64,000 nucleotides of DNA from Macrostomum lignano (GCA_002269645.1 NIVC01001170.1:186001-250000); one strand, 5' to 3'; shown: positions 24,407 through 62,460, numbered from the stretch's first letter. Notes: generated by a model not told the origin, from the letters alone. Program-made: numbers and translations.

Positions 24407-24433
24407 GGCAGACAGACAGACAGACAGGCAGGC

Positions 24434-24491
<58 letters not shown>

Positions 24492-24521
24492 GCAGACAGA
24501 CAGACAGACAGGCAGGCAGGC

Positions 24522-24578
<57 letters not shown>

Positions 24579-35842: not shown

Positions 35843-37958
<2,116 letters not shown>

Positions 37959-39300: not shown

Positions 39301-40030
39301 CCGGTTCACTCACCCACCCCACTGTCTCTTGCTCGGACTCTCTTCTGGGTCGTGAACTCGGACTCACCCACCCTGAACAATCATAATAAGTTTACCCACA
39401 ATATTAAATCGACCTACAAGCTCACCTTTAATCCTCCTTTAGAAATTTCATCAAATCCCAATCACTGGAATCACAATCCTTCTTGCCCTTACAGTAAATG
39501 TACATGTAATTTCTCACTTACCCTTGTGTACACCTGCTCCACATAAGCTGCATTAAGCAGCGGGTTTTTACAAGATTGAAAGTACATTTTATTAGGTATT
39601 GTAATTTCTATTTTTAGCAACATTCCCAACGGAAAATCTTCTACTTGCGTACTTGCGTGGAAAAGTCTATGCCAGACTACTAAACGATAAGTGACAGTAG
39701 GCTAGTTAGGAAAGTATCGTGATTAATACGCTCTTAAGTGAAACGGTAGGTCACTAAAATAGCCGCTGTGAAAGTTAACAAAAATTTATATAGATATACA
39801 AGACGATGGTGATCACACAAATGTTTACACAAATTAGTTTACGTGTTTAAACCGTTGACACGAGTCACGCAAATGCCCACGCGTGGTTTGCAAGATTTAT
39901 TTGATAAAATTTAAAGGAATAGCCAAGAAATATTTGTGCCAAATAGATCAAACTGACAGGCAATAAAAGCACTTTCTTAGAATTGTGAGTCATCAGCTGA
40001 TGGATGTCAAGAGTTATGCAAAGCTGCATC

Positions 40031-40356
40031 TTATCCGTTCGATCTGACGTTGCCCTTCTGGTCAGACTCTGCAAGTCAGCGGTGTGAGATTTTCTCAGTC
40101 AGGTGCAGCCAAAAACAGGAAATCTAAAAGCAGAAATGCTCAAAGCAACAGCAGTGAGTCACTCACCTCTGACCCGCTCCATCAGGTCCGGATTGGTGAT
40201 GACGCAGCTGATGCTGGGCTGCACGAGAACCCTGGCTGAGGCGCCGACCATTCGGCGTAGCATCGCCTTCGACTCTTCGCTCTCGCCCTTGTAGTAGAAG
40301 AACCTGAACGGGTCCTTGGCGACTGGCCTGGCGGATTTGGCTTGCTGGCTGGACAT
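40031..40356 (-). CDS. Unknown small-protein family, copy 1 (75 aa)
   Basis: Exon 1 40356-40167 (AGAG|gtgagt), exon 2 40068-40031 (ttgcag|AG; ESDQKGNVRSNG*). Confidence 0.75.
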
Positions 40357-40859
40357 TGCTAGCGGTTGAACTGAAGATAATTTGTGCTTAAAACAGTGCG
40401 CTCTGCTTAGGCTTGCTTTTGGCAGCAGAATCTTCTAGATATATATATATATATATATATGTACAGTAGGGCCCAGTTGATGAAACCGGGCAGAATTCTT
40501 TGGGATACCCTCTTATATGCTATTATGAGTCATATTCAAGGTTAGTGTTCTGTTTTTAAGCATAATTTGCAGTCTTAACAGTCTACCCCATCGAGCTTTG
40601 TATGGAATTTCTCGGAGCATACTGCTCGCTGCTCGTTCTAAATTTTACTTTCTAACTTTGGTAGCTCGGCTATTGTGAACAGGGGTAATCTGCCCGCCCC
40701 CATGAGTTTGGCTGCAATAAAATTCTGCAAGACTTCCAGTAGACTCAAGGTAGTTCGACAAAAATATCGGCTACTGGTTCGAGCTTCGGTTTTTGAAATT
40801 AACCCTTGAACTTATTCTTCCGCACACAGAAATGAACTTCCTGACTAAAGTTTGTTCGC

Positions 40860-41325
40860 TCAGAGATTGCTTGAGACCGTCTGCTCAGAGATTGCTTGAG
40901 ACCATCTGCTCAGAGATTGCTTGAGACCGTCTGCTCAGAGATTGCTTGAGACCGTCTGCTCAGAGATTGCTTGAGACCATCTGCTCAGAGATTGCTTGAG
41001 ACCGTCTGCTCAGAGATTGCTTGAGACCGTCTGGTCAGAGATTGCTTGAGACCGTCTGGTCAGAGATTGCTTGAGACCATCTGCTCAGAGATTGCTTGAG
41101 ACCGTCTGCTCAGAGATTGCTTGAGACCGTCTGCTCAGAGATTGCTTGAGACCGTCTGCTCAGAGATTGCTTGAGACCGTCTGCTCAGAGATTGCTTGAG
41201 ACCGTCTGCTCAGAGATTTCTTGAGACCGTCTGCTCAGAGATTGCTTGAGACCGTCTGCTCAGAGATTGCTTGAGACCGTCTGCTCAGAGATTGCTTGAG
41301 ACCGTCTGGTCAGAGATTGCTTGAG
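40860..41325. repeat. 25-bp minisatellite (GAGATTGCTTGAGACCGTCTGCTCA)
   Basis: Direct reading. Confidence 0.95.
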
Positions 41326-42448
41326 ACTCAGCGACTGACTCACTGTGACAGCCTTTCCTACTTGCAGAAAGTGCTTCTGCACCACCGCAACTCCTCTCTG
41401 TGGCGCGGTAAGAGGCCGGCGGGAAAGTCTAATGCTGGTACTTCTTCCTTCCAAGCAAAGTTCCTGATGTCGCGAGGACACAATACTTCCTGCTGGCTGT
41501 TGGCTGAGGACAAGTTACGACTTGGCGAGCAACAACCAAATCGCCACGCTACACCTGGCAGTGAGAACGAGGAAGCCGCTATGGAGGTTCCGGACGGGAA
41601 TGAGCAGCAGCCTATGAATGACCAACAGGAAGCTGGGCTTGCACCGCGCAGGAGCGCGGCGTGCACCTGATTGTTTTGCGCCATGATCTGTTAGTGTTCT
41701 AACTCAATTAATTGTATTGGAGTTCTAACTGACAAGGCACTTTGATGGCTTTGTTTATTCGCTGTGTCGTATAGCAGTCGTAGTCCGTTCATTGCTTTTT
41801 GTTATTACTAGCAAAAGCAATGCTTCATCAAGGCATTGATCACTTTTACTACAGCTTCAAACGGTACTCAACCAAAAATGTCCTAGAAATTTCCTATCAA
41901 GAATTCAAGCACAGGCTCAGTCCCAGTTTATATTAGCAAACCATCAAGCGGCCTGAGAAACGAGGACTGCGAGATCAAAGATACCTTACGAGAACAGGAC
42001 CTCTTGAAAGTGCCATGTGCAGGGTATACAGAGATAAATTCTAAGTTGAATTTTAAAACCCTTACCGTCACTCAAGGAGAAGACGATAGAGACATACGAG
42101 CAATGGAATTTCTAGCAATAGTCATCAGAGACATAAATGCAACTGGTCTCAAGAGCTTCATATTGGCTTCATAAATTAGCGCGGTATTTATACTTTTTAT
42201 TTATTAGATTTCTTGCATTTATACGAAGTGTTTTTCTTTCATTAAGAATATCAAATATATAATTTTATCTAAACAGCACCAAAAGAAATTCTAGTGTAGT
42301 GAGGTACTGAATTCGCTCAAGATTTCTCTGAGCAGACAGACAAAAACGCTTTTTTAAAAGCTTAACTTGGCTCCTCCATCCGAAGCTGTCACTTATATAA
42401 ACAGGCATGACGTCATCAAATCTCGAGCTATCCTGACACTCCGGCCGC

Positions 42449-42783
42449 TCAGCCGCTCGACCTGTCGTTGCCTTTCTGATTGGACTCTGAAAGTCAAAGT
42501 CAAAGGACTCTGTGAAATTTTCTCAGTCACGTGCAACCAAAACAGGAAATGTGAAAGCAGAAATGCTCAAAGCAACAGCAGTGAGTCACTCACCTCTGAC
42601 CCGCTCCATCAGGTCCGGATTGGTGATGACGCAGCTGATGCTGGGCTGCACGAGAACCCTGGCTGAGGCGCCGACCATTCGGCGTAGCATCGCCTTCGAC
42701 TCTTCGCTCTCGCCCTTGTAGTAGAAGAACCTGAACGGGTCCTTGGCGACTGGCCTGGCGGATCTGGCTTGCTGGCTGGACAT
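42449..42783 (-). CDS. Unknown small-protein family, copy 2 (75 aa)
   Basis: Exon 1 42783-42594, exon 2 42486-42449 (ESNQKGNDRSSG*); phase-1 GT-AG intron. Confidence 0.75.
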
Positions 42784-43374
42784 TGCTAGCGGCTGAACTG
42801 AAGATAATTTGTGCTTAAAACAGTGCGCTCTGCTTAGGCTTGCTTTTGGCAGCAGAATCTTTCATGCTATAGCCTATAATATATAAGGCCCAATTGATAA
42901 ACCGTGGAATTCCATGGGATACCCTCATATGCTATTTTTAGATCTTAGCATAGCGCGCGATTAGTGTACTGTTTTTAAGCAATAATGTGCAACTTTATCA
43001 GTGTACGCAGCTGATTGGGCACTCTTGACAATGCAAAAACCCCATCAAGCCTTGCTTGGAATCTCTTTGGACTTGCATGGAATACTTGCTTGCTTTTTTA
43101 TTTCTAAATTTGGTAGTAGCTAAGGCTGTTGTGACCAATGGGGTTAAGCTGTGGAAGCGTCGGGATTAGTCACACAGGGAGAATTCAAATCAATGCAGCG
43201 TCATCTCATAGAAGCTCCTGACGAGTGCTCCTGCCCCATGAAGTTTCTGTCAAAATGCTGCAATAATTCCAGCAGCCTTTTTTCGGTTTATGAAAATTAA
43301 CCCTAACCATTTCTGCAGTTAAATGAATATTATCATACTCACAGAAAGGAACTCCTGACTAAAGCTTGGCCCAT

Positions 43375-43700
43375 AGACTATGTCACTGTGACATCCAAAG
43401 CCATGCTAGCACGAGTATCCAATCACAGCCAACCATCGCTGTTATAAAAGCCGGGGTTTCACCCATAGAATATGTCACTGTGAAATCCAAAGCCATACTA
43501 GCACGAGTATCTAATCACAGCCAACCATCGCTGCTATAAAAGCCGGGGTTTGGCCCATAGACTATTTCATTCTGACATCCAAAGCCAGCTACGAATATCC
43601 AATTAGACAACCATCGCTAATACAAAGCCGGGGTTCGGCCTATAGAATATGTCACTGTGACATCCAAAGCGATGCAGCCACGAGTATCCAATCACAGCCA
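43375..43700. repeat. ~90-bp tandem repeat, about 3.5 copies
   Basis: TATGTCACTGTGACATCCAAAGCC...AAAGCCGGGGTT units. Confidence 0.85.
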
Positions 43701-44598
43701 ACAAACTCAATACCAGACTAATTAAACCCTCATTTTATGCTATTAGCATATGACAGCCGATTAAACTTAACATCAACAGCTACACTCCCTCTTTGAAACT
43801 CTGAGAAAACTTGACCATATGGGTTTTGGGTGTTCACTTACGCTTTTCTTATCAGAACATTTAATCGGTGAACGTGTTAGTAAGCGATAAAAGGCAAGCC
43901 AACTGCGAATGCTTATTTAAAGTAGAACTATCAATCTGGAAAATACACTCTACCATTTTTCGCAGCCTTAGTCGATGAATTTAATTCAATTTAACCTGTG
44001 TTGCAGTTTAGATTAACAAGTAATAAACTGATCTGCAAAACAATAAGGACTGCGAGACCATAAGGATCCTTTACTTGAACAGGGCCAGCTCAAAGTGCCA
44101 TTTGGGAGTAGAAAGTGAAGTTCACTTCCTGCTCAAGTGTAATTGGAACTCCCCATGATAAACTCGAACAGATCAAAGAGAATAAAGTATTGTACTCGTA
44201 AAGACGTAATGAAAATTCTAACAAAATTCATTAAAGAACATGACACAAGACGGAATGCTTTGAGCCTTGAGATTGAGATTTTATCTCCCGTTTCGTCGGA
44301 AAACACTTTGATTTAATAGCTTTTTTATTTACATTTTTCTTTCATTTTCTAATACTTAATTATGAGTTCGAAAAAAAATCATAAATTATACACATATGCA
44401 AGCATAAAATAAATAAATTTATCTATGCAACACAGAAAGCAATCATAGTGTGTAGTGAGATGTTGAATTTGCTCAAAATTTCCCTGAGCAGAGCAATGAA
44501 CACTGGTCTAAAAGCTGAACACTTGGTTCCTCAATCCGAAGCTGTCACTCATAAATAGACATGCGTAATATCTCGAGCTATCCTGACACTCCAGTCGC

Positions 44599-44921
44599 TC
44601 AGCCGCTCGACCTGCTGGTGCCCTTCTGGTCAGACTCTGCAAGTCAGCGGTGTGAAATTGTCTCAGTTAGATTGCAACTGAAACAGGAAATCTAAAAGCA
44701 GAAATGCTCAAGGCAGCTGTGAGTCACTCACCTCTGACCCGCTCCATCAGGTCCGGATTGGTGATGACGCAGCTGATGCTGGGCTGCACGAGAACCCTGG
44801 CTGAGGCGCCGACCATTCGGCGTAGCATCGCCTTCGACTCTTCGCTCTCGCCCTTGTAGTAGAAGAACCTGAACGGGTCCTTGGCGACTGGCCTGGCGGA
44901 TCTGGCTTGCTGGCTGGACAT
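44599..44921 (-). CDS. Unknown small-protein family, copy 3 (75 aa)
   Basis: Exon 1 44921-44732, exon 2 44636-44599 (ESDQKGTSRSSG*). Confidence 0.75.
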
Positions 44922-45281
44922 TGCTAGCGATTTGAGTTGCTGCAACAATTGCTGCTTCAAGAAGAGGATGGTTCTTTAGTTTGTTGATGAGAGTTCAAAG
45001 TCGTGAACTCAGTTTATTTATGCTGAAGCGATGGCGAGTCTTGGGCCGCACCTCGGCAAAACCCGCGAATTTCGCAATGTGTGGGCGAGGGAATTCCGTG
45101 GGCGCGAAGTAGCTAAAAATAGAAACAGCTGTAATGACTGACCGTGGCAAATTTTTCGCTCTGCAATTTTCGCTTTCATTCAGCGAAACTCATGAATAAA
45201 TAAAACCGGGTTTACTCAGACAGAACTGGCTAGCCATAGGCTTAGAATCATTCGGATAAACCAAGAGATATGCAAGGTTCG

Positions 45282-45284
<3 letters not shown>

Positions 45285-45373
<89 letters not shown>

Positions 45374-45376
45374 CTC

Positions 45377-45449
<73 letters not shown>

Positions 45450-45516
45450 CTAAGACAGACAGACAGACAGACAGACAGACACTAAGACAGACAGACAGAC
45501 AGACACTAAGACAGAA

Positions 45517-45565
<49 letters not shown>

Positions 45566-45592
45566 CTAAGACAGACAGACAGACAGACACTA

Positions 45593-45669
<77 letters not shown>

Positions 45670-45670
45670 T

Positions 45671-45749
<79 letters not shown>

Positions 45750-45760
45750 CTAAGACAGAC
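45285..45760. repeat. (GACA)n microsatellite
   Basis: Direct reading. Confidence 0.95.
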
Positions 45761-46174
45761 AGGGAGACTTACCTTCACACGAGCGCAGTTAACTAAATGC
45801 GCACTTCCTTACAGCCTTCCTGTGGGTGAACACGAGCTCTGTGCATGGAGCAGGGGTTTGGGGTGCCCCAACTTAAAATCCAAGCTGATGCGTTGCAATG
45901 AGTCAGACGAAAGTTTCCAAGCTACATTTCCAGATGTCTCTCGGTACAACAAGTCGAACTACGTAGCTAATTTGAGCAATTATGCAGCAAAGAGATCTTA
46001 GCAACGATTCAACAGAGCATGTAGCCATTTATTATGGGCACAGTAAGCATGTGGATTATCCAAACATTTATTGATACGCGCATCTCAGAGATTGCAAGCA
46101 GCTAGCAAGGTGTTGTCTGGTGATAAGATATTCTGTAGCTGACTCGCTTGAATGCTGCTAGTAGGGACTGAACC

Positions 46175-46790
46175 AGTGCCAGTCACTTCGATCTCAATCT
46201 ATAGTCAGTGCCAGTCACTTCGATCTCAATCTATAGTCAGTGCCAGTCACTCCGATCTCAATCTATAGTCAGTGCCAGTCACTCCAATCTCAATCTACAG
46301 TCAGTGCCAGTCACTCCGATCTCAATCTACAGTCAGTGCCAGTCACTCTGATCTCAATCTACAGTCAGTGCCAGTCACTCCAATCTCAATCTACAGTCAG
46401 TGCCAGTCACTCCAATCTCAATCTACAGTCAGTGCCAGTCACTCTGATCTCAATCTACAGTCAGTGCCAGTCACTCTGATCTCAATCTACAGTCAGTGCC
46501 AGTCACTCTGATCCCAATCTACAGTCAGTGAAAGTCACTCCGATCTCAATCTATAGTCAGTGCCAGTCACTCTGATCTCAATCTATAGTCAGTGCCAGTC
46601 ACTCCAATCTCAATCTACAGTCAGTGAAAGTCACTCCAATCTCAATCTACAGTCGGTGAAAGTCACTCCAATCTCAATCTACAGTCAGTGAAAGTCACTC
46701 CGATCTCAATCTATTGTCAGTAAAAGTCACTCCGATCTCAATCTATAGTCAGTGCCAGTCACTCCAATCTCAATCTACAGTCAGTGCCAG
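46175..46790. repeat. 32-bp minisatellite; inverted copy at 54045-54640
   Basis: CAGTCAGTGCCAGTCACTCCGATCTCAATCTA units. Confidence 0.95.
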
Positions 46791-47117
46791 TGACTTCGCC
46801 AATTATTTTTTTTCACTACAAGCTAAAACTTTTAGAAAGTATTTTAGAATAACGGACTTGTTGCCAAGAAAGCGAAAAGAAGAAATTATTGACGTATTGA
46901 AAATCCAATACTGCAATAAAAGCAATGTTACTCAGGCCAAGGAATTTATTGTTCATACATTTTATAAGCAGAGATGAGTCCGAGTCTGTACAGAGCAGTG
47001 CTCAGCTTGAGCAGAGAAAGCATTTATTTGACTCAATGCGTTTCCATTGTAAGCTATTGTCATTTGAAATCTATGCACAAACAGGCATGACATCATATCC
47101 GGGATGTCCTCCGGCGC

Positions 47118-47440
47118 TCAGCCGCTCGACCTGACGTTGCCCTTCTGGTCAGACTCTGCAAGTCAGCGGTGTGAAATTGTCTCAGTCAGGTGCAGCCAAA
47201 AACAGGAAATCTAAAAGCAGAAATGCTCAAAGCAGCTGTGAGTCACTCACCTCTGACCCGCTCCATCAGGTCCGGATTGGTGATGACGCAGCTGATGCTG
47301 GGCTGCACGAGAACCCTGGCTGAGGCGCCGACCATTCGGCGTAGCATCGCCTTCGACTCTTCGCTCTCGCCCTTGTAGTAGAAGAACCTGAACGAGTCCT
47401 TGGCGACTGGCCTGGCGGATCTGGCTTGCTGGCTGGACAT
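47118..47440 (-). CDS. Unknown small-protein family, copy 4 (75 aa, P-to-S change in the DPF motif)
   Basis: Exon 1 47440-47251, exon 2 47155-47118 (ESDQKGNVRSSG*); TATAAATA upstream at 47548-47541. Confidence 0.75.
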
Positions 47441-47540
47441 TGTTGACGGTGGCTTGTAAATTAATTTGCGGTGGCTTTGAATTGAAGCTTCTGAGTCTCC
47501 TGGAGCTGGTTCATGGATTTACAGTCGGTGTGAGATCTTG

Positions 47541-47604
47541 TATTTATAAGCATTTCCCTATTAGGTTCTACCGCGTAAAAGCAATTCGTAATTGCTAAAA
47601 ATAG
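47541..47604 (-). promoter_or_regulatory. Candidate promoter of small-gene copy 4: TATA box plus MEF2 consensus
   Basis: TATAAATA (47548-41) and CTAAAAATAG (47595-604) lie upstream of the ATG at 47440. Confidence 0.6.
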
Positions 47605-47904
47605 CATCCTATGGATTCCCCGGTGTACACTGCATAGCATTTACACTCCGCCCTCAGGGTACAGGGTTACAGGGTACGACCTACTAAAAACTGTGTACTA
47701 CCTTGTAGTAGATATAGCTATGGCGAAATATTTATTTTTATGCATTAATTGTTATTTCTGACTGGGTACGATTTTTTAGTAAACATTTAGGCTGTTGCAA
47801 TAGTAACGAGAATGTTTTTGCAATATTCAGTATTTTATATAGCGTTTGAGTGCTTTCTCCTTGATTAACCAATTCTTGCACGAAGTTCACGCGCTGCATT
47901 TTGT

Positions 47905-48495
47905 TGAATAGTCTCTGAGGTCACTCTCTGTTTTTCATGGGGTAGACTCTGAGGTCACTCTCTTTGTTCATGGGATGGACTCTGGGGTCACTCTCTGTTT
48001 TTCATGGGATAGACTCTGAGGTCACTCTCTGTTTTTCATGGGATGGACTCTGAGGTCACTCTCTGTTTTTCATGGGATAGACTCTAAGGTCACTCTCTGT
48101 TTTTCATGGGATGGACTCTGAGGTCACTCTCTGTGTTTCATGGGGTAGACTCTGAGGTCACTCTCTTTGTTTCATGGGATGGACTCTGAGGTCACTCTCT
48201 GTGTTTCATGGGATAGACTCTAAGGTCACCCTCTTTGTTTCATGGGATAGACTCTAAGGTCACCCTCTTTGTTTCATGGGGTAGACTCTGAGGTCACTCT
48301 GTGTTTCATGGGGTAGACTCTGAGGTCACTCTCTGTGTTTCATGGGGTAGACTCTGAGGTCACTCTCTTTGTTTCATGGGGTAGACTCTGAGGTCACTCT
48401 CTGTGTTTCATGGGGTAGACTCTGAGGTCACTCTCTGTGTTTCATGGGGTAGACTCTGAGGTCACTCTCTGTGTTTCATGGGGTAGACTCATGGG
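47905..48495. repeat. 34-bp minisatellite
   Basis: GACTCTGAGGTCACTCTCTGTGTTTCATGGGGTA units. Confidence 0.95.
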
Positions 48496-48734
48496 ATAAT
48501 GATGGTGCATTTTCATATTTACTAATCAATATTTCTATACAAAACGCGGTAGTACCTTCGTCAGAAGCGCGAATAAGTGGTACTACTGCGTTAGTGTTAT
48601 AGTGCACTGGTAAACCCACGTCTGGAAAGTGTAAGGTCTAAAAATAGAACCAGGAAGTACCCTGTGAGGTCAGTAGCAGCTGGCGACAGTTCTACACCAA
48701 ATTCTTGTGTTTTAAATAGCCTTGGTTATCTGCT

Positions 48735-49900
48735 GAGGGGTTTGAAGGTCTCCTGATAAAGGGTTTGAAGGTCTCCTGATAAAGGGTTTGAAGGTCTCCT
48801 GATAAAGGGTTTGAACGTCTCCTGATGAAGGGTTTGAAGGTCTCCTGATGAAGGGTTTGAACGTCTCCTGATGAAGGGTTTGAAGGTCTCCTGATGAAGG
48901 GTTTGAACGTCTCCTGATGAAGGGTTTGAACGTCTCCTGATGAATGGTTTGAAGGTCTCCTGATGAATGGTTTGAACTTCTCCTGCTGAAGGGTTTGAAG
49001 GTCTCCTGATGAATGGTTTGAACGTCTCCTGATAAAGGATTTGAACGTCTCCTGATAAAGGGTTTGAACGTCTCCTGATGAAGGGTTTGAAGGTCTCCTG
49101 ATGAAGGGTTTGAACGTCTCCTGATGAAGGGTTTGAACGTCTCCTGATAAAGGATTTGAACGTCTCCTGATAAAGGGTTTGAACGTCTCCTGATGAAGGG
49201 TTTGAAGGTCTCCTGATGAAGGGTTTGAACGTCTCCTGATGAAGGGTTTGAAGGTCTCCTGATGAATGGTTTGAAGGTCTCCTGATGAATGGTTTGAACT
49301 TCTCCTGATGAAGGGTTTGAAGGTCTCCTGATGAATGGTTTGAAGGTCTCCTGATGAAGGGTTTGAAGGTCTCCTGATGAATGGTTTGAACGTCTCCTGA
49401 TAAAGGGTTTGAAGGTTTCATGATGAAGGGTTTGAAAGTCTCCTGATGAAGGGCCTGAAGGTTTCATGATGAAGGGTTTGAAGGTTTCATGATGAAGGGC
49501 CTGAAGGTTTCATGATGAAGGGTTTGAAGGTTTCATGATGAAGGGTTTGAAGGTTTCATGATGAAGGGTTTGAAGGTCTCCTGATGAAGGGTTTGAAGGT
49601 TTCATGATGAAGGATTTGAAGGTTTCATGATGAAGGGCTTGAAGGTTTCATGATGAAGGATTTGAAGGTTTCATGATGAAGGGCTTGAAGGTTTCATGAT
49701 GAAGGATTTGAAGGTTTCATGATGAAGGGCTTGAAGGTTTCATGATGAAGGATTTGAAGGTTTCATGATGAAGGGCTTGAAGGTTTCATGATGAAGGGTT
49801 TGAAGGTTTCATGATGAAGGGCTTGAAGGTTTCATGATGAAGGATTTGAAGGTTTCATGATGAAGGGCTTGAAGGTTTCATGATGAAGGGTTTGAAAGTC
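48735..49900. repeat. 23-bp minisatellite (GAAGGGTTTGAAGGTCTCCTGAT variants)
   Basis: About 50 units, with a polar switch in unit type near 49420. Confidence 0.95.
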
Positions 49901-50444
49901 TCCTGGTCCGAATGGTCTGAGTTCACCTCAGGAAATTCCTGAAGGGCTATCTGTGAATTCTAAAGTCTGGGTTGGAAGTGTTTTAGCCCACACTTACAAA
50001 GAATTTCGAATTTATAAAATGATGTCATAACTAACACAGCTAGCTAATAGAGTACTTGGCTTTGAAAAAATTGCTTTAAAAGTTGTTATAGTTTGTTTCT
50101 TAAAGAAAAACTACTGGTCTGTTTACAGCAAAAAGCACGAGCCCTCAAAGCACAAGTTCTATCTGACTTAAAATGTCAGCATTGTCTTTGAGCCTTGGCA
50201 TCTCAGTTATTAGAAAGATATAAAGCCATTAGTGATCTTCAATGGCCTCAACGAGAAGCCGCTAAGCTGATAGCATTCCTACAAGGCAGTAGCCATTTCT
50301 GGATTGGATCATAGCCAAAAATAAAATAGGGACTAAGTACTACCTTGTACCATAAGACTGTAGATACGAGCATTGCATTGATCCACGGTGTGCTAAAAAT
50401 AGAACAGGGTATTACCTAGTAATATACACAGGGTGCTGCCTATG

Positions 50445-51373
<929 letters not shown>

Positions 51374-51658
51374 GAATTTATAAAGACACTTTATTATCTC
51401 AATGCAACAACAAGACTGCAAGGCCAGATTCTACAAGGCAGTGCCCTGTTTCTCCCCAAGCCGAGTGAATTGTGTTAGCCCCAACACGGCACCGGCGTCA
51501 CTCACCGAAATGAGGTCTCAGATAGCGCACAGTGGGACCAGAATACGAGGTAGTGCCCAGTTTCAAGTGGGTTCAATACGCACTGCAGCTGCCTGGGCCA
51601 AGAAGCTTAGACAGTCGTTCGTTAGTTCGCTGTTCACGCCCTGACGAAGGACAGCAAA

Positions 51659-52471
51659 ATGGCTGGTAAGCAACCACGCGATCCGTTCAAAGATTTCTAT
51701 ATGCCAGGTGAAAGCGAGGAGTCCAAGGAGGAGCTCAGGAGAAATACTGCAGCAACTGCTACTCAACTGGTTCAGCCTACGCCGTCTGCAATTTTTACTA
51801 ATCCTGAGCTCATTGCCAAGATTGAAGCAGGTAGAATGCGTTGGTTTCCATTCTGTCCTGTCCTGTCCTGTCCTGTCCTGTCCTGTCCTGTCCTCTCCTG
51901 TCCTGTCCTGTCCTCTCCTGTCCTCTCCTGTCCTGTCCTCTCCTGTCCTGTCCTATCCTGTCCTGTCCTGACCTGTCCTGTCCTGTCCTGTCCTCTCCTG
52001 TCCTGTCCTGTCCTGTCCTGTCCTGTCCTGTCCTGTCCTGTCCTGTCCTGTCCTGTCCTGTCCTGTCCTATCCTGTCCTGTCCTGTCCTGTCCTGTCCTC
52101 TCCTGTCCTGTCCTGTCCTGTCCTGTCCTCTCCTGTCCTCTCCTGTCCTGTCCTGTCCTCTCCTGTCCTCTCCTGTCCTGTCCTGTCCTGTCCTCTCCTG
52201 TCCTGTCCTGTCCTGTCCTGTCCTGTCCTGTCCTCTCCTGTCCTCTCCTGTCCTGTCCTGTCCTCTCCTGTCCTCTCCTGTCCTGTCCTCTCCTTTCATG
52301 TCCTGTCCTGATATAATCCGTTCATTTTTGCACGGATCGACATACCAAGAAACAATCAAACTTATTTCAGCAAAGAAGGAGAAAGCAGAGCAAGAGAAGC
52401 AACAGCAGGAGCAGACTAAGCCAAAATACTCAACCGGAAGTAGTGGGAGCTCCTCTGGCAAAACAAATTGA
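51659..52471 (+). CDS. Unknown small-protein family, divergent paralog (90 aa)
   Basis: Exon 1 51659-51830 (MAGKQPRDPFKDFYMPGESEESKEELRR...TNPELIAKIEA), then a phase-1 intron filled with (TCCTG)n, then exon 2 52371-52471 (AKKEKAEQEKQQQ...GKTN*). The intron sits at the same position and phase as in the other copies. Confidence 0.78.
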   Translation: MAGKQPRDPFKDFYMPGESEESKEELRRNTAATATQLVQPTPSAIFTNPELIAKIEAGRMRWFPFCPVLSCPVLSCPVLSCPVLSSPVLSCPVLSCPVLSCPVLTCPVLSCPLLSCPVLSCPVLSCPVLSCPVLSCPILSCPVLSCPLLSCPVLSCPLLSSPVLSCPLLSSPVLSCPVLSCPVLSCPVLSCPLLSSPVLSCPLLSSPVLSSPFMSCPDIIRSFLHGSTYQETIKLISAKKEKAEQEKQQQEQTKPKYSTGSSGSSSGKTN

Positions 52472-52744
52472 TGATTCGAGCGGTCCACAAATACTGACAT
52501 CAAGCCTTATGGCTCACATACTTTGCTGAATAATATTTGATCTACCATTTAATTCAATTTGGTGAATTCACGAAGTCCAGATAATTGTTTGTGCTTTTTC
52601 TTAATTAGCGACCAAATTTTGCATACATTTTTTACCGAATACAAACTGTGCAAATCTGCTTTAGAATGTTTCCAATTTGACAGACAAAGCAAAAAGGAAT
52701 TATTTGTGATTAAGGGGCCAACAAGCACCTCTGTGAATCTAAGA

Positions 52745-52980
52745 ATCATAGGGTGTCTGTCCTTGAGAATGGGAGCTTGGGTGTCTGTCCTTGAGAATGG
52801 GAGCTAGGGTGTCTGTCCTTGAGAATGGGAGCTAGGGTGTCTGTCCCTGAGAATGGGAGCTAGGGTGTCTGTCCTTGAGAATGGGAGCTTGGGTGTCTGT
52901 CCTTGAGAATGGGAGCTAGGGTGTCTGTCCGTGAGAATGGGAGAGTGTCCGTCCCTGAGAATGGGAGAGTGTCTGTCTGT
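52745..52980. repeat. 28-bp minisatellite
   Basis: GAGCTAGGGTGTCTGTCCTTGAGAATGG units. Confidence 0.9.
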
Positions 52981-53414
52981 CACCCTGCAAATCTCTTGGT
53001 CTTTCCGAATGATTCCAAAGTCATCCATATACTAAAAATGAAAATCTTGCTTGTATGTTTGTACGAAATCGATTTTCTCCTGAATGGCTTAACCGATTTT
53101 CATGAGACTTGCACTGTTCAATCAGAAACAGTGCTTAGAAGAAACAAAAGCGAAAATTGAAGAGCAAAATACTTGCTACGGTCAGTCATTACAGCTGTTT
53201 CTATTTTTACGTAGCTACGAGCGTACTTTATAACCCACGGAATTCCCGCGCTCACACATTGCAAAGTGCGCTGGTTTTTCCGAGGTGCAGCCGAAGACTC
53301 GCCATCGCTTCAGCATAAATAAATTCTGTTCGAAACTTTGAACTCTCATAAAAAAACTGAAGAATCATCTTCTTCAAGAAGCAGCAATTGTTGCAGCAAC
53401 TCAAATCGCTAGCA

Positions 53415-53737
53415 ATGTCCAGCCAGCAAGCCAGATCCGCCAGGCCAGTCGCCAAGGACCCGTTCAGGTTCTTCTACTACAAGGGCGAGAGCGAAGAGTC
53501 GAAGGCGATGCTACGCCGAATGGTCGGCGCCTCAGCCAGGGTTCTCGTGCAGCCCAGCATCAGCTGCGTCATCACCAATCCGGACCTGATGGAGCGGGTC
53601 AGAGGTGAGTGACTCACTGCTGCTTTGAGCATTTCTGCTTTTAGATTTCCTGTTTTTGGCTGCACCTGACTGAGACAATCTCACACCGCTGACTTGCAGA
53701 GTCTGACCAGAAGGGCAACGTCAGGTCGAGCGGCTGA
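53415..53737 (+). CDS. Unknown small-protein family, copy 5 (inverted, 75 aa)
   Basis: Exon 1 53415-53604, exon 2 53700-53737 (ESDQKGNVRSSG*). Confidence 0.75.
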
Positions 53738-54044
53738 GCGCCGGAGGACATCCCGGATATGATGTCATGCCTGTTTGTGCATAGATTTCAAATGACAATA
53801 GCTTACAATAGAAACGCATTGAGTCAAATAAATGCTTTCTCTGCTCAAGCTGAGCACTGCTCTGTACAGACTCGGACTCATCTCTGCTTATAAAATGTAT
53901 GAACAATAAATTCCTTGGCCTGAGTAACATTGCTTTTATTGCAGTATTGGATTTTTTCTAGTCTTCGAAAAAAAATTTGTTTTTTCTTGGCGACTGTAAC
54001 TACTTTCTAATAGTTTTAGCTTGTGGTGAAATAGCTAATTGGCG

Positions 54045-54640
54045 AAGTCACTGGCGCTGACTGTAGATTGAGATCGGAGTGACTGGCACTGACTGTAGAT
54101 TGAGATCGGAGTGACTGGCACTGACTATAGATTGAAATCGGAGTGATTGGAACTGACAATAGATTGAGATCGGAGTGACTTTCACTGACTGTAGATTGAG
54201 ATTGGAGTGACTTTCACCGACTGTAGATTGAGATTGGAGTGACTGGCACTGACTATAGATTGAGATTGGAGTGACTGGCACTGACTATAGATTGAGATTG
54301 GAGTGACATTCACTGACTGTAGATTGAGATTGGAGTGACTTTCACTGACTGTAGATTGAGATTGGAGTGACTTTCACCGACTGTAGATTGAGATCGGAGT
54401 GACTTTCACTGACTGTAGATTGAGATTGGAGTGACTGGCACTGACTATAGATTGAGATTGGAGTGACATTCACTGACTGTAGATTGAGATCGGAGTGACT
54501 GACATTGACTGTAGATTGAGATTGGAGTGAGTTTCACTGACTGTAGATTGAGATAGGAGTGACTGGCACTGACTATAGATTGAGATTGGAGTGACTGGCA
54601 CTGACTATAGATTGAGATCGAAGTGACCGGCACTGACTTA
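54045..54640. repeat. 32-bp minisatellite, reverse complement of 46175-46790
   Basis: Part of the inverted duplication. Confidence 0.95.
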
Positions 54641-55489
54641 TCACGTTAACGTAGTGCGTTACTGCTGGCTAGGTACACTAATACTTCATGCAATTATTAT
54701 TTTTTTGAAACGTTTCTTTGAAAAAATTAAACTGGCGAAACTCACTTAAGTCACGCCATATGGAGCTGGCAAATATTCTTTCTTCAATATACAGTGTAGT
54801 GTATTTTTAGCCCTAAACGGGTTTACATAAAATTTCCAGTAAATAAAAGACTAGTGTCGCCTCTTATTACTTTAGTCGTCCTCAATTACTACATTTACAC
54901 TTATCTGTAGTACGAACTTTATACGTTGCAGAAGAATTACGCTATTTCTGAAAAATTGCAGAAGATTCACGCAAACAGACGCTTGCGGGAGAAGCGACAC
55001 GAAGGAAAGCTACGTGGATCGGAGGAAGGCCACCACGGAAACGGAGCTGGATCGGAGGAAGGCCACCACGGAAACGGAGCTAATCACAGCTCGTCACAGC
55101 CATCATTCCCGCCTTATAAGGACCCAGTTCACCTCCTCCTCCATGCTGAAGTGCTGGCACCAGCTTGCAACAAGGACTTTTTGATGCGGGGAAGAGGAAG
55201 AGGTCGCATGGGCTGAGGTCCAGGAACTTTTGGCCGATATGGAGGAATTTCCAACCCCATGACTTGATGGCTGTGCCTTAAAAAACTGCCTGGCGAAATG
55301 AAGTCAGCCATGGGTACTGCAGGGAATTAATTCACTACATGTAAGTTCTGTTACACATTTTGTCACACAGTCAGCTAAGAATTTAAAACTTCATGCAGAT
55401 TTGCAGCCAATGAGTCGAGCTGTGCCATTTTAAATATTTGTTGGCCCAAGCCTTTTTTATTAATATTATTAATTAAAAAAATACTAATA

Positions 55490-55778
55490 GGGCAGATGTG
55501 CAACCGCAACAGCTCAGTCGTTGCGCGGCGCATCTGAAGGCTGCATACGGCTGTTCAGTCCAAGGACTGGGACTGGGGGTCGCCACACATACACACACCC
55601 TCAATTACCCCAGCTAATTCTCGCACCCATTTTACAGCAGGGTGAACTTAACCAATGCAGGGTTAATTAAAATGTCTTGCTCAAGGACACAAATTGTTCC
55701 TGTGGGATCGAGACGAACCACCGACCTTCTAGGTAATGCAGAGTCCGGCGCTCTAAAACCACTAGGCTATACGACCTG
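55490..55778 (-). mobile_element. tRNA-derived SINE, same family; its 3' part recurs at 63165-63265
   Basis: Head GCAGGTCGTATAGCCTAGTGG, an interrupted B box, CCTTGAGCAAGACA and CTGTAAAATGGG; clear similarity to 30960-31160. Confidence 0.75.
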
Positions 55779-55844
55779 CATAGAATGCCGTCATATTTGC
55801 GAAAGGCGGCTGCCCAAAACTTGTGTGTAATCTTTTACAGCCGC

Positions 55845-58498: not shown

Positions 58499-61091
58499 TT
58501 CATAAATTTTTATGAAAAAGTTATGGGGATTATTCCTGAAGATTTAACTATAAAAGATAAAGATATGAGTGACTGTTTCGATTGCATGTGAGGTGGGGGT
58601 GGAGAAGAATTTTTTCTTGGAACTGTTGCTTTTGAAAATTTGCTGGCACCAGTGAGGTGGGGCGGGTTCCTCGTTTGAATAGCCGCTGGCGTTGAGTTCG
58701 CACGAATAAAGCCGGAAAAATCGCGCAGGTGAATCTCAACGAATTTCTTCTCCTTTTACTCCGACAGCCGGGGTCCTCAAATTCCGGGGGGAGGGTAGTT
58801 GTAATCGTAGCGGAGCGGTCGTAGAGCGGCACGGTCGTTCAGTTGTAGAAGCACAGGAGATTCTGACTCCGTAAATTAATGCGTCGATGAGTTGAACTTG
58901 TTACTTTTAGTAGGGTAGTTGCTGCCACCACCGTAATTTACGTATTACGGAGCGTCTAATGGTCTCAAAGCTTTCTGTGAGATGAGACTTCGGTTATTTT
59001 ACGCCCCACGAACAAAGGATTCAAGATAGGCTATGGCTTAAATCAACGGATAAAGAGTAGTTAATATTTAATTCGTCGGCGTTATTTGTTTATTGATTAT
59101 AATTCATTAAAACGTTTTGTTAGCAGGCGTTGGAAATTTATTTTGTTGCGAACGAGAAAAAGGGGGCCGGCGACGACGGATGCCGAGACAGCGCAAGTTA
59201 ACTAAAACTAAACAAGGAGAGAGAGAGCGAAGGAAGGGGAGGACAAAAACATCGCGGCAGAAACCGAAACTTAAATAAGAAAAGATATTAAATCCCAGGG
59301 CGGGGGTTGGGACGGATGACTGGACAACAGGGTGGGCAAGCCCGTGGGCAACCTGATGGACAAAAAAATCACAACGCATAAGGTAGCAAAATTTGGGAAA
59401 TATCAACAAAAGACAAAAACAATCCAACGGCGGGGCAAACCGGAGGGACAACAATAGGAGAACACAAAACAACACCGGGAAAAAAGGAGACACAACCGTT
59501 AGAAAAGTTACAAGGAAAAATTCCGGGAATTGGGAGTCAAATTAAATTAAAAACTATTATTATTATTATTAGACGTATTACAGTTTTAGTGGCAACCCGC
59601 CTGCCACACATGCCCCGATAACTTGACAAGTGTCAAGCCTAAATCCGAAGAATATCTGATTGTAAACAAAATATCCAATGAATATAGTTAATATATGATT
59701 AAGGTAAACTTTTAGTTTGTTAATAAGTAATATAAATATACAAAGATTATATTGTTAAACAGAAACGTTTTTTTCTTTTTGACACAAGTACAGTTAGCAA
59801 ATTTTTAACTTAGGGACTTAAAATAAAGTGCATGAGCGCTTTTGCTGAAATGACCTTGTTCATCGTATAACTATCTCTTAATAAATGATAAAATTATATA
59901 ATATTATTATTATGTCGCGCCTAGAAATAAATTCTGTTGTTTCATAATTTGTTACCTAATGATTAACTTGGAGAGACTCTAAAAAATAACTGAGAGTTTC
60001 CTTCATTTTTAGCAACATTTTCCTTGTTGAAATTTCATAATTTCAGTTACACTGTATATAATTTTACACTATTTTTTTTGCTAAAAGAATTGCTAAAGAA
60101 TTAAAAATTTTTATTCAGGCATGTCTCTACTCAGTATTGTTGACTTAGGCTGGTCGCTGACTCACACTTGCTGGTGTAGAATCAAAATGAAACTATTTGA
60201 GTAACAATAAGTAGGCCTAAACTAATACTAGATACATAATACATTAGCATTAGGATCCAATGTTAGATCTTTATTATTAATATTAGTATGCCCTGTTCTA
60301 GGTCTCTATAAATACCAAAATATATTTAAGCTTATTTCAGAAGTATATAGAGCCTAAGAAAATAGCTTGAAATGATTAAAAATATATATTGTACTTATGC
60401 TACTAGGTTTTTAGCATTCCCTTTTATATATAAATTTTATATTGAATATACATATATTATATACAAAGTTCTACAAATAACTGGCTCCAAAAACTATTTA
60501 AACAAAGAAAAGTTTTCACAAAATAATTTTATATTGCTATTATTACTTGTTTTTATTTGATAACTTCTTTTTAAATTAAGTAGCATAAAGGGCCAACTAT
60601 TTGACATGTTTTTCTAATTTCATCAAGTTCAACTTTATATATAAAAATTGGTCGTCTTTATCATGTATATTTCACATCCTCTAGAACATCTAAAAGTAAA
60701 ATTTTTCCATTGAACAAAACTACAAAAAATAAAATAAAATAAAATATGACTTCATAGATTTCTACCAAAATTGTCTTTTATTTCATTAACAATATATTTT
60801 ATTATTTTAAAAAACCTTTTATTCCAAATAGAATAATAGTCTTTTTTATTATGGTAAAAATTATTTTATCCCTTAGCATAACTATGACACAAAACACCTA
60901 GATAAAGATATCAATATGCCATGCTCTTTAATATGATTAGAAATAGTCTTAATTTTTCATCAAGAATATGACTTTGTAGACCATGGAAGTAAAACTCTTA
61001 AAATTAACTATATGGTGATTGTTCTAGCTAAATTTATATGTAGTAATGTTTTGTTTTCTACATTTTTAAGTAGATCTTTAACTTTAACTGC

Positions 61092-62281: not shown

Positions 62282-62460
62282 AGATTGTGCTCAAATAATT
62301 TCCTACTTCATGATAATTCTAGTGATTCTGTATCAAAATACGCGTATTGTTTGAAGGAACCACTCGGCATGCCATCCAGATCTTTCACTGGAGGGGTGCG
62401 CTTTGTTTATTTGATTTGCCGTTTCATTTGAAGGGTTGCCCGGGTCAGGAGCACCACTGC

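What the first reader, a model, noticed from the sequence alone, without database searches (positions are those of the whole stretch)
40031..53737. Cluster of six intact genes for an unassigned 75-90 aa protein family
Five near-identical copies (four minus, one plus) and one strongly diverged paralog share a gapless ~45-aa core, DPFxxFYxxGESEESKxxLRRxxxAxAxxLVQPxxSxxxTNPxL. All six have the same phase-1 intron at the same position and short, variable hydrophilic tails. The motif and intron are conserved despite large divergence of the paralog, which argues for a real selected protein rather than transposon debris. There is no signal peptide or TM helix, and I cannot match it to any family I know. 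This is the best candidate for an undescribed system in the window.
Basis: partly seen in the sequence, partly recalled or inferred. Interest (0 to 1): 0.85.

Follow-up and report, generated by a model that had tools for sequence, protein, structure and literature searches.

The report
Flatworm-only small-protein gene cluster
The window holds six real, transcribed two-exon genes for a 75-90 aa protein found so far only in the flatworm Macrostomum lignano; the protein is clearly under selection, but the genes are already in GenBank as hypothetical proteins and nothing points to an unusual mechanism.

Summary
There are five near-identical 75-aa genes (four on the minus strand, one on the plus) and one 90-aa paralog.

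The window is Macrostomum lignano (Mlig_3_7 assembly). Four of the six products exactly match database entries, including PAA71355.1 and PAA71356.1. That GenBank annotation is built only from RNA-seq transcripts, so spliced mRNAs exist.

Protein-level selection is clear. Between the 75-aa genes and the paralog, core identity by codon position is 67/65/25 %, and 18 of 26 identical residues use different codons. Among the 75-aa copies, exon 1 is 0-1.6 % divergent while the intron is 5-32 % divergent and the flanks cannot be aligned. This points to concerted evolution plus constraint.

No homolog turned up outside M. lignano among 1.84 billion representative proteins, Pfam or the PDB. AlphaFold gives low-confidence helices only. 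I tested UniRef's "TIR domain-containing" label and rejected it.

The best reading is a lineage-restricted, dosage-amplified, soluble intracellular small protein whose exon-1 core is a binding module. Each copy has its own TATA-type promoter, and most also have a MEF2-type site. Function is unknown and interest is modest.

The parts
40167..40356 (-). c40356- exon 1 (ATG at 40356; 63 codons + 1 nt; conserved core)
40031..40068 (-). c40356- exon 2 coding part, stop included (tail ESDQKGNVRSNG)
42594..42783 (-). c42783- exon 1
   Evidence: The product is identical to UniRef100_A0A1I8H8P9.
42449..42486 (-). c42783- exon 2 coding part (tail ESNQKGNDRSSG); the intron is 107 nt
44732..44921 (-). c44921- exon 1
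44599..44636 (-). c44921- exon 2 coding part (tail ESDQKGTSRSSG)
   Evidence: The orthologous copy on the two homeologous scaffolds has a 1-nt deletion here, which gives a 105-aa product.
47251..47440 (-). c47440- exon 1 (carries P16S, so DSF instead of DPF)
   Evidence: The product is identical to PAA71356.1, BOX15_Mlig011580g1.
47118..47155 (-). c47440- exon 2 coding part
49998..50028 (-). Alternative upstream first exon for c47440- (MTSFYKFEIL). Its GTAAGT donor splices in frame to an acceptor at 47505, giving a possible 107-aa N-extended isoform.
   Evidence: It matches the annotated 107-aa product PAA75435.1/PAA83467.1 of the homeologous copy.
51659..51830 (+). Paralog exon 1 (57 codons + 1 nt)
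   Evidence: The spliced product is identical to PAA71355.1, BOX15_Mlig003409g1.
51831..52370 (+). Paralog intron, 540 nt, mostly a (GTCCT)n microsatellite. It is 260 and 235 nt in the homeologs.
52371..52471 (+). Paralog exon 2 coding part (K/E/Q-rich, then S/G-rich tail)
53415..53604 (+). c53415+ exon 1
   Evidence: The product is identical to UPI0007A16516.
53700..53737 (+). c53415+ exon 2 coding part
40453..40459 (-). TATA-like element 103 nt upstream of the c40356- ATG, within a (TA)n run
42879..42885 (-). TATA-like element at -102 of c42783-
45015..45021 (-). TATA-like element (ATAAATA) at -100 of c44921-
47541..47548 (-). TATA-like element (TATAAATA) at -108 of c47440-
53315..53321 (+). 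TATA-like element (ATAAATA) at -100 of c53415+
42932..42941 (.). CTAWWWWTAG (MEF2-type consensus) at -158 of c42783-
45113..45122 (.). CTAWWWWTAG at -201 of c44921-
47595..47604 (.). CTAWWWWTAG at -164 of c47440-
53201..53210 (.). Near-match CTATTTTTAC at -214 of c53415+
50393..50402 (.). CTAAAAATAG about 365 nt upstream of the alternative first exon at 50028. It also lies upstream of the paralog, across the (ATCT)n microsatellite.

Best explanation
This is a taxonomically restricted ('orphan') gene family of the free-living flatworm Macrostomum lignano. It encodes small (75-90 aa), hydrophilic, non-secreted proteins.

Shown:
- The functional unit is exon 1. It encodes a roughly 48-aa core, DPFxxFY-xx-GESEESKxxLRR...LVQP...TNPxL, which has been kept by purifying selection since an old duplication separated the 90-aa paralog from the 75-aa lineage.
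- The 75-aa gene was then amplified into a local array of four tandem copies and one inverted copy. Copy number is 4-6 on the homeologous scaffolds.
- Within that array, exon 1 stays virtually identical, even at synonymous sites, while introns, tails and flanks drift.

Inferred:
- Gene conversion combined with selection keeps exon 1 uniform. GC-rich codons (GC3 0.84) fit either biased conversion or selection for high expression.
- Each copy is an independent transcription unit, with a TATA-type element about 100 nt upstream of its ATG. Most copies also have a canonical MEF2-type site (CTAAAAATAG) 50-110 nt further upstream. This suggests high-dosage expression in a differentiated cell type such as muscle.
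- The protein most probably acts as a short binding or regulatory module. A predicted amphipathic helix following the acidic, CK2-like GESEES patch, and a second helix starting at TNPxL, would fold on a partner. An enzyme or a secreted effector is less likely.
For: Gene structure and identity:
- The organism and the existing annotation come: PAA71355.1 and PAA71356.1 match my spliced products exactly.
- The Mlig_3_7 GenBank annotation is derived only from RNA-seq transcript assemblies plus TransDecoder (PMC5730564). The splice junctions are therefore transcript-supported.

Selection:
- Core identity by codon position is 67/65/25 %. Of 26 identical residues, 18 use different codons, including CGC/AGG and AGC/TCT switches.
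- pN is 0.32-0.35 against pS 0.96-0.98.

Concerted evolution:
- Across 15 non-redundant copies on three scaffolds, exon 1 has 6/190 variable sites and the intron has 41/108 variable columns.
- Copy pairs whose introns differ by 10-15 % have 0-1 exon-1 differences, Fisher p 1e-5 to 1e-7.
- The divergence profile is 0-1.6 % in exon 1 and about 50 % immediately upstream and downstream.
- GC3 is 0.84 in the 75-aa genes, 0.45 in the paralog and 0.63-0.70 in most neighbouring genes.

Lineage restriction.

Protein properties:
- No TM segment or signal peptide; pI 10.0 for the 75-aa form and 7.9 for the paralog.
- AlphaFold2 predicts helices at 27-44 and 56-72 in the 75-aa protein and at 20-36 and 49-72 in the paralog, with pLDDT 65-67.

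Promoters:
- A TATA-like element lies at -100 to -108 in all five 75-aa copies, across three upstream-sequence classes that cannot be aligned with each other.
- CTAWWWWTAG occurs 6 times in the window, all between 39.6 and 50.4 kb, against 1.43 expected; 0 of 100 shuffles reached 6.
Against: - There is no direct expression, localisation or interaction data. None of the six gene identifiers appears in any paper text or held supplement that I searched.
- The structure models are low-confidence and rest on only about two effective sequences. The 'binding module' idea is therefore an inference from size, composition and predicted helices.
- MEF2-type and TATA-type matches are consensus matches, not evidence of binding. 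Copy c40356- lacks the MEF2-type site, and the paralog has no proximal one.
- Net charge is not conserved between the two lineages.
- The absence of synonymous differences in exon 1 could reflect very recent conversion alone, without any dosage selection.
- Transcriptomes of other Macrostomum species are not in the databases I searched, so 'restricted to M. lignano' really means 'absent from other sequenced flatworm proteomes in UniProt/NCBI'.
Confidence: 0.55

Rival explanations
1. The proteins are truncated TIR-domain proteins, as UniRef names two 75-aa members, and act in TIR-type signalling or NAD+ cleavage.
For: UniRef100_A0A1I8HSH8 and A0A1I8H8P9 are named 'TIR domain-containing protein'. 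The DPFxxF...GE segment superficially resembles TIR box 1 (DxFxSF.GED).
Against: Pfam shows no TIR family at E<=10. The family profile matches none of the many TIR chains in the PDB at E<=10. hhalign of the family against an alignment of PDB-verified TIR domains (RPS4, Roq1, RPV1, MyD88) gives probability 1.6 %, and the aligned stretch is not box 1. The proteins are about half the length of a TIR domain and end before the catalytic-Glu region. AlphaFold predicts no beta strands.
Confidence: 0.03
2. The units are transposon-borne or pseudogene debris, copied passively and not functional as protein genes.
For: The genes are multi-copy and sit in a repeat-rich region with minisatellites, a LINE and an LTR element nearby. 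One copy carries P16S, and one orthologous copy on the homeologs has a frameshifted tail.
Against: All six reading frames and splice sites are intact. The codon-position pattern is a strong sign of protein-level selection. Similarity between copies stops at the gene borders, with no terminal repeats and no TE ORF in the unit. There is no Pfam TE domain. Transcript-based annotation exists.
Confidence: 0.03
3. Exon 1 is conserved mainly at the nucleotide or RNA level (a structured or regulatory RNA, or a conversion hotspot), and the ORF matters less.
For: Copies whose introns differ by 10-15 % show no synonymous differences in exon 1. Identity begins about 10 nt before the ATG and extends into the first ~50 nt of the intron.
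Against: The paralog keeps the amino-acid core while its third codon positions are randomised (25 % identity) and GC3 shifts from 0.84 to 0.45. That is incompatible with nucleotide-level constraint being the main force. There is no Rfam match in the window. Gene conversion explains the recent identity without any RNA function.
Confidence: 0.05
4. The core is a domesticated fragment of an Hsp70/actin-fold nucleotide-binding domain, specifically the beta-alpha-beta segment around the '...AVITVP' strand.
For: The best PDB profile hits are four chains of one fungal Hsp70-like protein (depositors' name 'Putative heat shock protein'; I recognise it as Ssz1). The aligned segment is SEIATRYLRRLVGAASEYLGKKVTSAVITIP against SEESKAMLRRMVGASARVLVQPSISCVITNP.
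Against: E = 0.6-0.9 against only 177,635 sequences, which is not significant. None of the other Hsp70 chains in the PDB appear. Pfam HSP70 is not hit. The exhaustive HMMER search returned no Hsp70.
Confidence: 0.03
5. The genes encode secreted peptides, such as seminal-fluid, adhesive or antimicrobial peptides, which are classes of lineage-specific genes described in Macrostomum.
For: They are small, lineage-restricted and tandemly amplified, as such effector genes often are. This is a general pattern recalled from knowledge, not a test.
Against: The N-termini are hydrophilic, with no hydrophobic stretch and no cysteine pattern. The paralog lacks the N-terminal extension entirely.
Confidence: 0.03

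Closest known systems
GenBank/UniProt hypothetical proteins of Macrostomum lignano: BOX15_Mlig003409g1 (PAA71355.1), BOX15_Mlig011580g1 (PAA71356.1), and the homeologous Mlig003009g1/g2, Mlig001698g1/g3/g5, Mlig006971g1, Mlig032648g1
   Same: These are the same genes or their homeologs. Four of the six window products are identical to entries listed. The same cluster, with 4-6 small copies plus the paralog, lies next to an IPK gene on NIVC01000884.1, and a copy of the cluster is also on NIVC01000418.1.
   Different: The database entries carry no function. c44921- and c40356- are not among the listed products. No paper that I could search mentions any of the identifiers.
Mlig-sperm1 family (Mlig020950), the flatworm-specific gene family described in PMC5816591
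   Same: It is also a multi-copy M. lignano gene family with no Pfam match and no homologs outside flatworms. It is a precedent that such families can have essential, tissue-specific roles.
   Different: The sequences are unrelated, since Mlig-sperm1 homologs were not found. The Mlig-sperm1 family is large and conserved in planarians, whereas this family has no detectable planarian or parasite homolog. No expression or RNAi data exist for this family.
TIR domain (Pfam PF01582/PF13676; PROSITE PS50104)
   Same: Only the UniRef name of two members, plus a loose D-x-F-x-x-F...G-E resemblance to TIR box 1.
   Different: All three membership tests failed, and the proteins are half the domain length.
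Concertedly evolving tandem arrays of small, highly expressed genes (for example histone, metallothionein or ubiquitin arrays; general knowledge, not tested here)
   Same: The array is local, the coding sequence is near-identical across copies while the spacers have diverged, copy number varies between haplotypes or homeologs, and the codons are GC-rich.
   Different: The protein is unrelated to any of those families. High expression is inferred here, not shown.

Membership tests
TIR domain | Significant match to TIR sequence profiles | tested here: not met
   Pfam hmmscan at E<=10 returns no TIR family. The family profile hits no TIR chain in the PDB at E<=10.
TIR domain | Profile-profile similarity to solved TIR domains across box 1 and the alpha-A helix | tested here: not met
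   hhalign of A2 against A4 (RPS4, Roq1, RPV1, MyD88, all verified against the PDB) gives probability 1.6 % over 18 columns outside box 1.
TIR domain | A flavodoxin-like alpha/beta fold of about 130-140 residues that includes the BB loop and catalytic-Glu region | tested here: not met
   The proteins are 75 and 90 aa. AlphaFold2 models contain helices only, and Foldseek finds no match.
Hsp70/actin-fold NBD fragment | Significant sequence match to the Hsp70 family | tested here: not met
   There is only one Hsp70-like protein (four PDB chains named 'Putative heat shock protein') at E 0.6-0.9. Pfam HSP70 is not hit, and no Hsp70 appears.
Transposable-element gene | Similarity to transposase, RT, integrase or Gag, or terminal repeats bounding the repeated unit | tested here: not met
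   There is no Pfam hit. Similarity between copies is confined to the gene plus 200-1000 bp of pair-specific flank, with no terminal repeats.
Taxonomically restricted (orphan) protein-coding gene family | No detectable homolog outside the lineage | tested here: met
   Only M. lignano proteins were found among 1.84 billion representatives and in two searches of 5.8 billion clusters. Limit: transcriptomes of other Macrostomum species are not in these databases.
Taxonomically restricted (orphan) protein-coding gene family | Transcribed and spliced as predicted | tested here: met
   This is indirect. GenBank proteins identical to my spliced products come from an annotation built only from RNA-seq assemblies (PMC5730564). 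I did not inspect reads directly.
Taxonomically restricted (orphan) protein-coding gene family | Purifying selection on the protein | tested here: met
   Codon-position identity is 67/65/25 %, and 18 of 26 conserved residues use different codons. pN/pS is 0.33-0.37 with dS saturated.
Concertedly evolving tandem array | Coding sequence homogenised relative to intron and spacer | tested here: met
   Exon 1 has 0-1 differences in 190 nt while introns have 9-15 in 95, p 1e-5 to 1e-7.
MEF2-regulated gene | YTAWWWWTAR site in the proximal promoter | tested here: met
   A perfect CTAWWWWTAG lies at -158 to -201 in 3 of the 5 small copies, with a 9/10 match in a fourth. There are 6 sites in the cluster against 1.43 expected in the window.
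MEF2-regulated gene | MEF2 occupancy, or MEF2-dependent or muscle-enriched expression | not testable with these tools
   No expression or ATAC data were reachable. The multiome paper's supplements are not held.
Secreted peptide | N-terminal signal peptide | tested here: not met
   The N-termini are hydrophilic, and the maximum Kyte-Doolittle score over 19 residues is 1.29 (75 aa) and 0.54 (90 aa).

The most novel reading that the evidence does not exclude
The exon-1 core is a new protein-binding module that arose within Macrostomum. It has been amplified to roughly 15-17 copies across the (hidden polyploid) genome because its dosage matters in one differentiated cell type. Muscle is the candidate, if the conserved MEF2-type + TATA promoter architecture is real. 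In that case the family would be a lineage-specific regulator or structural accessory of a conserved machine. A second unexcluded oddity is that the complete lack of synonymous change in exon 1 reflects an extra nucleotide-level constraint on top of the protein.
Probability: 0.15. Interest if true: 0.45.

Novelty: new member of a known kind. Interest (0 to 1): 0.25.

Why it matters
If the reading holds, this is a clean, compact example of orphan-gene evolution. An old duplication left two lineages that share only a 48-aa peptide. One lineage then underwent local amplification with concerted evolution of a single exon, promoter turnover around a retained TATA/MEF2-type architecture, and a large shift in codon GC.

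M. lignano has working transgenesis and RNAi, so function and promoter logic can be tested directly. The family would add one more case to the large, mostly unexplored set of flatworm-specific genes.

It opens no long-standing question, and nothing in the sequence points to a new mechanism or a multi-gene system.

Tried and rejected
Searches that found no relative:
- Pfam hmmscan of both proteins at E<=10 gave only noise, Tla3_C at E 0.16.
- PDB phmmer and profile searches gave nothing significant.
- The exhaustive HMMER profile search and two word-index searches, the second at E<=10, found only the M. lignano clusters.

Structure:
- AlphaFold2 on both family members gave pLDDT 65-67.
- Foldseek against the PDB gave 0 matches. 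I did not try the viral library, because the model is low-confidence and the organism is an animal.

Labels tested and rejected:
- TIR.
- Hsp70 fragment: judged to be chance.

Literature:
- The six gene identifiers are in no paper text.
- They are also absent from the held supplements of PMC5816591, PMC5730564, PMC12896417, PMC7336406 and PMC8662610. One of these files was truncated when stored.
- PMC12801592 and PMC11398382 have no supplements held.
- Mlig-sperm1 is a different gene, Mlig020950.

Other checks:
- Rfam and tRNA scans of the window found nothing. I considered an intron-hosted snoRNA and dropped it, because the intron is 95 nt and has no C/D or H/ACA signature.
- I noticed a heat-shock-element-like GAAnnTTC upstream of c40356- by eye. 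It is not conserved in c42783-, so I dropped it.
- An X-box-like palindrome, GTTGCAGCAAC, in the 5'UTR of two copies does not fit the RFX consensus length, so I dropped it.
- I did not use the bacterial, archaeal, viral or metagenome contig collections, because the organism is an animal.

Full report
**1. What is in the sequence**

Reading 39.8-54.6 kb and searching all six frames shows five copies of an almost identical open reading frame. Four are on the minus strand, with ATGs at 40356, 42783, 44921 and 47440. One is on the plus strand, with its ATG at 53415. A diverged relative starts at 51659 on the plus strand.

Each reading frame is cut by a GT..AG intron after the first base of the homologous codon (phase 1). 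Splicing gives five 75-aa proteins and one 90-aa protein. Intron lengths are 95-107 nt in the small genes. In the paralog the intron is 540 nt, almost all (GTCCT)n.

The one correction is that copy 47440 reads DSF instead of DPF. tblastn finds exactly six copies and no relics, and the paralog matches the small copies at E about 5e-15. This is far beyond chance.

**2. Organism and prior annotation**

A profile search returned only two protein clusters, both from Macrostomum lignano. Their members include four exact matches to window products:
- PAA71355.1 (BOX15_Mlig003409g1), identical to my spliced paralog.
- PAA71356.1 (BOX15_Mlig011580g1), identical to the 47440 product, including its P16S change.
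- A0A1I8H8P9, identical to the 42783 product.
- UPI0007A16516, identical to the 53415 product.

The window is therefore part of the 291,546-bp scaffold of assembly GCA_002269645.1 (Mlig_3_7).

The same cluster exists on two further scaffolds, NIVC01000884.1 and NIVC01000418.1. It has 4-6 small copies plus the paralog in the same order, and on NIVC01000884.1 it lies next to an inositol polyphosphate kinase gene, as it does in the window. This fits the known redundancy of the assembly of this hidden polyploid (PMC5730564).

**3. Are they expressed and spliced?**

I could not read RNA-seq directly. However, the GenBank annotation of Mlig_3_7 was produced only from transcript assemblies: StringTie/TACO on RNA-seq plus a de novo assembly, ORFs called by TransDecoder, and an RPKM >= 0.5 cut-off applied to novel transcripts (PMC5730564).

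Proteins identical to my spliced products therefore imply transcripts with exactly these junctions.

A 107-aa annotated isoform on the homeologs (PAA75435.1/PAA83467.1) led me to an alternative upstream exon. In the window it lies at 50028..49998 on the minus strand. Its GTAAGT donor joins in frame to an acceptor at 47505, 65 nt upstream of the 47440 ATG.

**4. Selection**

I compared the 75-aa gene with the paralog over the gapless 48-codon core.
- Identity by codon position is 67 %, 65 % and 25 %.
- 26 residues are identical, and 18 of them are encoded by different codons. These include six-fold-degenerate switches (CGC/AGG, CGA/AGA, AGC/TCT).
- Nei-Gojobori counts give pN 0.32-0.35 and pS 0.96-0.98, so dS is saturated and dN/dS is well below 1.

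**5. Concerted evolution of exon 1**

Across 15 non-redundant small copies on the three scaffolds, exon 1 has 6 variable sites in 190 nt. The intron has 41 variable columns in 108.

Copy pairs whose introns differ by 10-15 % have 0 or 1 differences in exon 1, with Fisher p between 1e-5 and 1e-7.

A sliding profile over the five window copies gives these divergence levels:

| Region | Divergence |
|---|---|
| Upstream of about -14 | ~50 % (cannot be aligned) |
| Exon 1 | 0-1.6 % |
| Intron | 5-32 % |
| Exon 2 | 10-12 % |
| Past the stop codon | ~55 % |

Even synonymous sites are frozen. Protein-level selection alone does not explain that. Gene conversion restricted to a tract of about 250 nt, together with selection, is the simplest account.

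The small genes have GC3 0.84, the paralog 0.45, and most neighbouring genes 0.63-0.70. This is compatible with GC-biased conversion or with selection for expression.

Pairwise flank similarity is mosaic:
- 40356 and 42783 share about 210 bp upstream.
- 42783 and 44921 share about 190 bp downstream.
- 44921 and 53415 share about 250 bp upstream.
- 47440 and 53415 share about 1 kb downstream, in inverted orientation.

This looks like an old array reshuffled by unequal exchange, not like a mobile element.

Tails are free to vary. On the two homeologs, the ortholog of copy 44921 has a 1-nt deletion in exon 2 that gives a 105-aa product.

**6. Promoters**

The upstream regions fall into three classes that cannot be aligned with each other. 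Even so, all five small copies have a TATA-like element 100-108 nt before the ATG.

Four of the five also have CTAWWWWTAG 158-214 nt before the ATG. Three of these are perfect and one is a 9/10 match. This is the textbook MEF2 consensus, YTA(A/T)4TAR, which I cite from established knowledge.

The window holds six perfect sites, all between 39.6 and 50.4 kb, against 1.43 expected. None of 100 shuffles reached six. One further site, at 50393, lies about 365 nt upstream of the alternative first exon. The flanks of these sites share nothing beyond a roughly 13-nt motif.

These are consensus matches only. They suggest independent promoters with a common logic, and they suggest expression in a differentiated cell type such as muscle. 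That is inference.

**7. What the protein is**

There is no Pfam family, no PDB sequence or profile match, and no relative among 1.84 billion representative proteins by full HMMER. A second word-index search at E<=10 also found nothing new.

The proteins are hydrophilic (GRAVY -0.61 and -1.24). They have no hydrophobic segment and no signal-like N-terminus. pI is 10.0 for the 75-aa form and 7.9 for the paralog.

AlphaFold2 on the shallow family alignment gives low-confidence models with pLDDT 65-67. Both have a helix starting right after GESEES and another starting at TNPxL. Foldseek finds nothing.

I tested two leads and dropped both.
- UniRef calls two members 'TIR domain-containing protein'. 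Pfam and PDB searches show no TIR match. hhalign against an alignment of four PDB-verified TIR domains gives 1.6 % probability.
- The top PDB profile hits are to one Hsp70-like protein at E 0.6-0.9, with no other Hsp70 chain. I treat this as chance.

**8. Best explanation, and what is shown versus inferred**

Shown:
- These are real two-exon genes, and they are transcript-supported through the annotation.
- The exon-1 peptide is under strong protein-level constraint.
- Exon 1 is homogenised among the amplified copies.
- Copy number varies between homeologs.
- The family is absent from every other proteome in the databases searched.
- The protein is soluble and non-secreted in character.

Inferred:
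- Amplification serves dosage.
- The core acts as a short binding or regulatory module that folds on a partner.
- Expression is driven by TATA + MEF2-type promoters, possibly in muscle.

I put about 0.9 on 'real, selected, lineage-restricted protein family', about 0.25 on the binding-module mechanism, and about 0.2 on the muscle/MEF2 idea. The composite confidence is 0.55.

**9. Comparison with known things, and novelty**

The genes themselves are already public as hypothetical proteins, so the gene models are not new. The family is not in Pfam, and none of the papers or held supplements I could search mentions it.

The nearest precedent in kind is the flatworm-specific Mlig-sperm1 family (PMC5816591), which is unrelated in sequence. 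That paper also shows that flatworm-specific genes are numerous in this animal.

I therefore file the finding as a new, uncharacterised member of a known kind: an orphan, tandemly amplified small-protein gene family. It is not a new system. Interest is 0.25. The case is tidy and experimentally tractable, but a specialist would not be surprised by it.

**10. Limits**

- I inspected no RNA-seq reads and no expression atlas.
- Other Macrostomum species are not in the searchable databases.
- The structure models rest on two effective sequences.
- dS is saturated, so omega can only be bounded, not estimated.

Noticed in passing
window 39608-50402: The canonical MEF2-type motif CTAWWWWTAG occurs six times, all inside the gene cluster, against 1.43 expected for the whole window. 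The instances share an extended form, GCTAAAAATAGAA, but no flanking similarity. Sites at 39608 and 48638 are not next to any recognised exon.
   Followed up: partly
window 49998-50028 (-) and 47505: There is an alternative upstream first exon (MTSFYKFEIL) for copy 47440. It splices across two minisatellites and would give a 107-aa N-extended isoform in frame. The homeologous isoform is annotated as PAA75435.1. Whether the extension is translated is unknown.
   Followed up: partly
UniRef100_A0A1I8HSH8 / A0A1I8H8P9 (products of this family): UniRef names two 75-aa members 'TIR domain-containing protein'. Pfam, the PDB profile search and hhalign against verified TIR domains all fail to support this, so the label looks like an automatic-annotation false positive.
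   Followed up: yes
window 16847-22187 (+): An apparently intact non-LTR retrotransposon. ORF1 is 528 aa with no Pfam hit. ORF2 is 1234 aa with endonuclease (Exo_endo_phos), reverse transcriptase and RNase H domains. The region is GC-rich (~0.60).
   Followed up: partly
window 55015-63169: A 225-bp direct repeat at 99.6 % identity (55015-55239 and 62945-63169) brackets minus-strand ORFs with RT and RNase H-like domains (55762-57267). This looks like a young LTR retrotransposon. A 117-aa and a 178-aa ORF at 61.1-62.3 kb (+), neither with a Pfam hit recorded, lie inside the span.
   Followed up: partly
window 22568-29890 (-) and 36354-37958 (+): Host genes flank the cluster. One is a P4-type phospholipid-translocating ATPase, seen as several exons with a PhoLip_ATPase_C hit. 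The other is an inositol polyphosphate kinase (IPK) whose long ORF runs through a (CTGT)n microsatellite. The IPK gene is also next to the cluster on the homeologous scaffold NIVC01000884.1.
   Followed up: partly
window 40858-41327, 45280-45750, 46174-46795, 47908-48490, 48724-49905, 50440-51375, 51850-52300, 52749-52981, 54043-54638: Nearly every spacer in the cluster holds a different mini- or microsatellite: a 25-bp unit, (GACA)n, a 32-bp unit present on both sides in inverted orientation, a 34-bp unit, a 23-bp unit, ~950 nt of (ATCT)n, (GTCCT)n inside the paralog's intron, and a 28-bp unit. The paralog's intron repeat keeps the frame open, so a mechanical ORF of 270 aa runs through it.
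   Followed up: no
L001 2349 (-) = L002 4818 (+), and L003 4333 (-): On both homeologous scaffolds the ortholog of copy 44921 has a 1-nt deletion in exon 2. This replaces the 12-aa tail with a 42-aa read-through, giving a 105-aa product. The window copy keeps the frame but has two tail substitutions. Exon 1 is untouched in all of them.
   Followed up: partly
window 40369-40378, 42796-42805, 44939-44947, 47453-47462 (all -); 51641-51649 and 53389-53397 (+): Each gene has an AG that ends 12-21 nt before its ATG, in most copies preceded by a pyrimidine-rich run (for example ttatcttcag, ttgttgcag, aatttacaag). These could be spliced-leader trans-splice acceptors, which are common in this species. 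I did not test this.
   Followed up: no
window 1-8600 (-): Exons encoding ankyrin repeats (7190-7579) and a multi-pass membrane segment (1996-2745) suggest a TRP-like channel gene. It is interrupted by coding-looking minisatellites at 5.1-7.2 kb.
   Followed up: no
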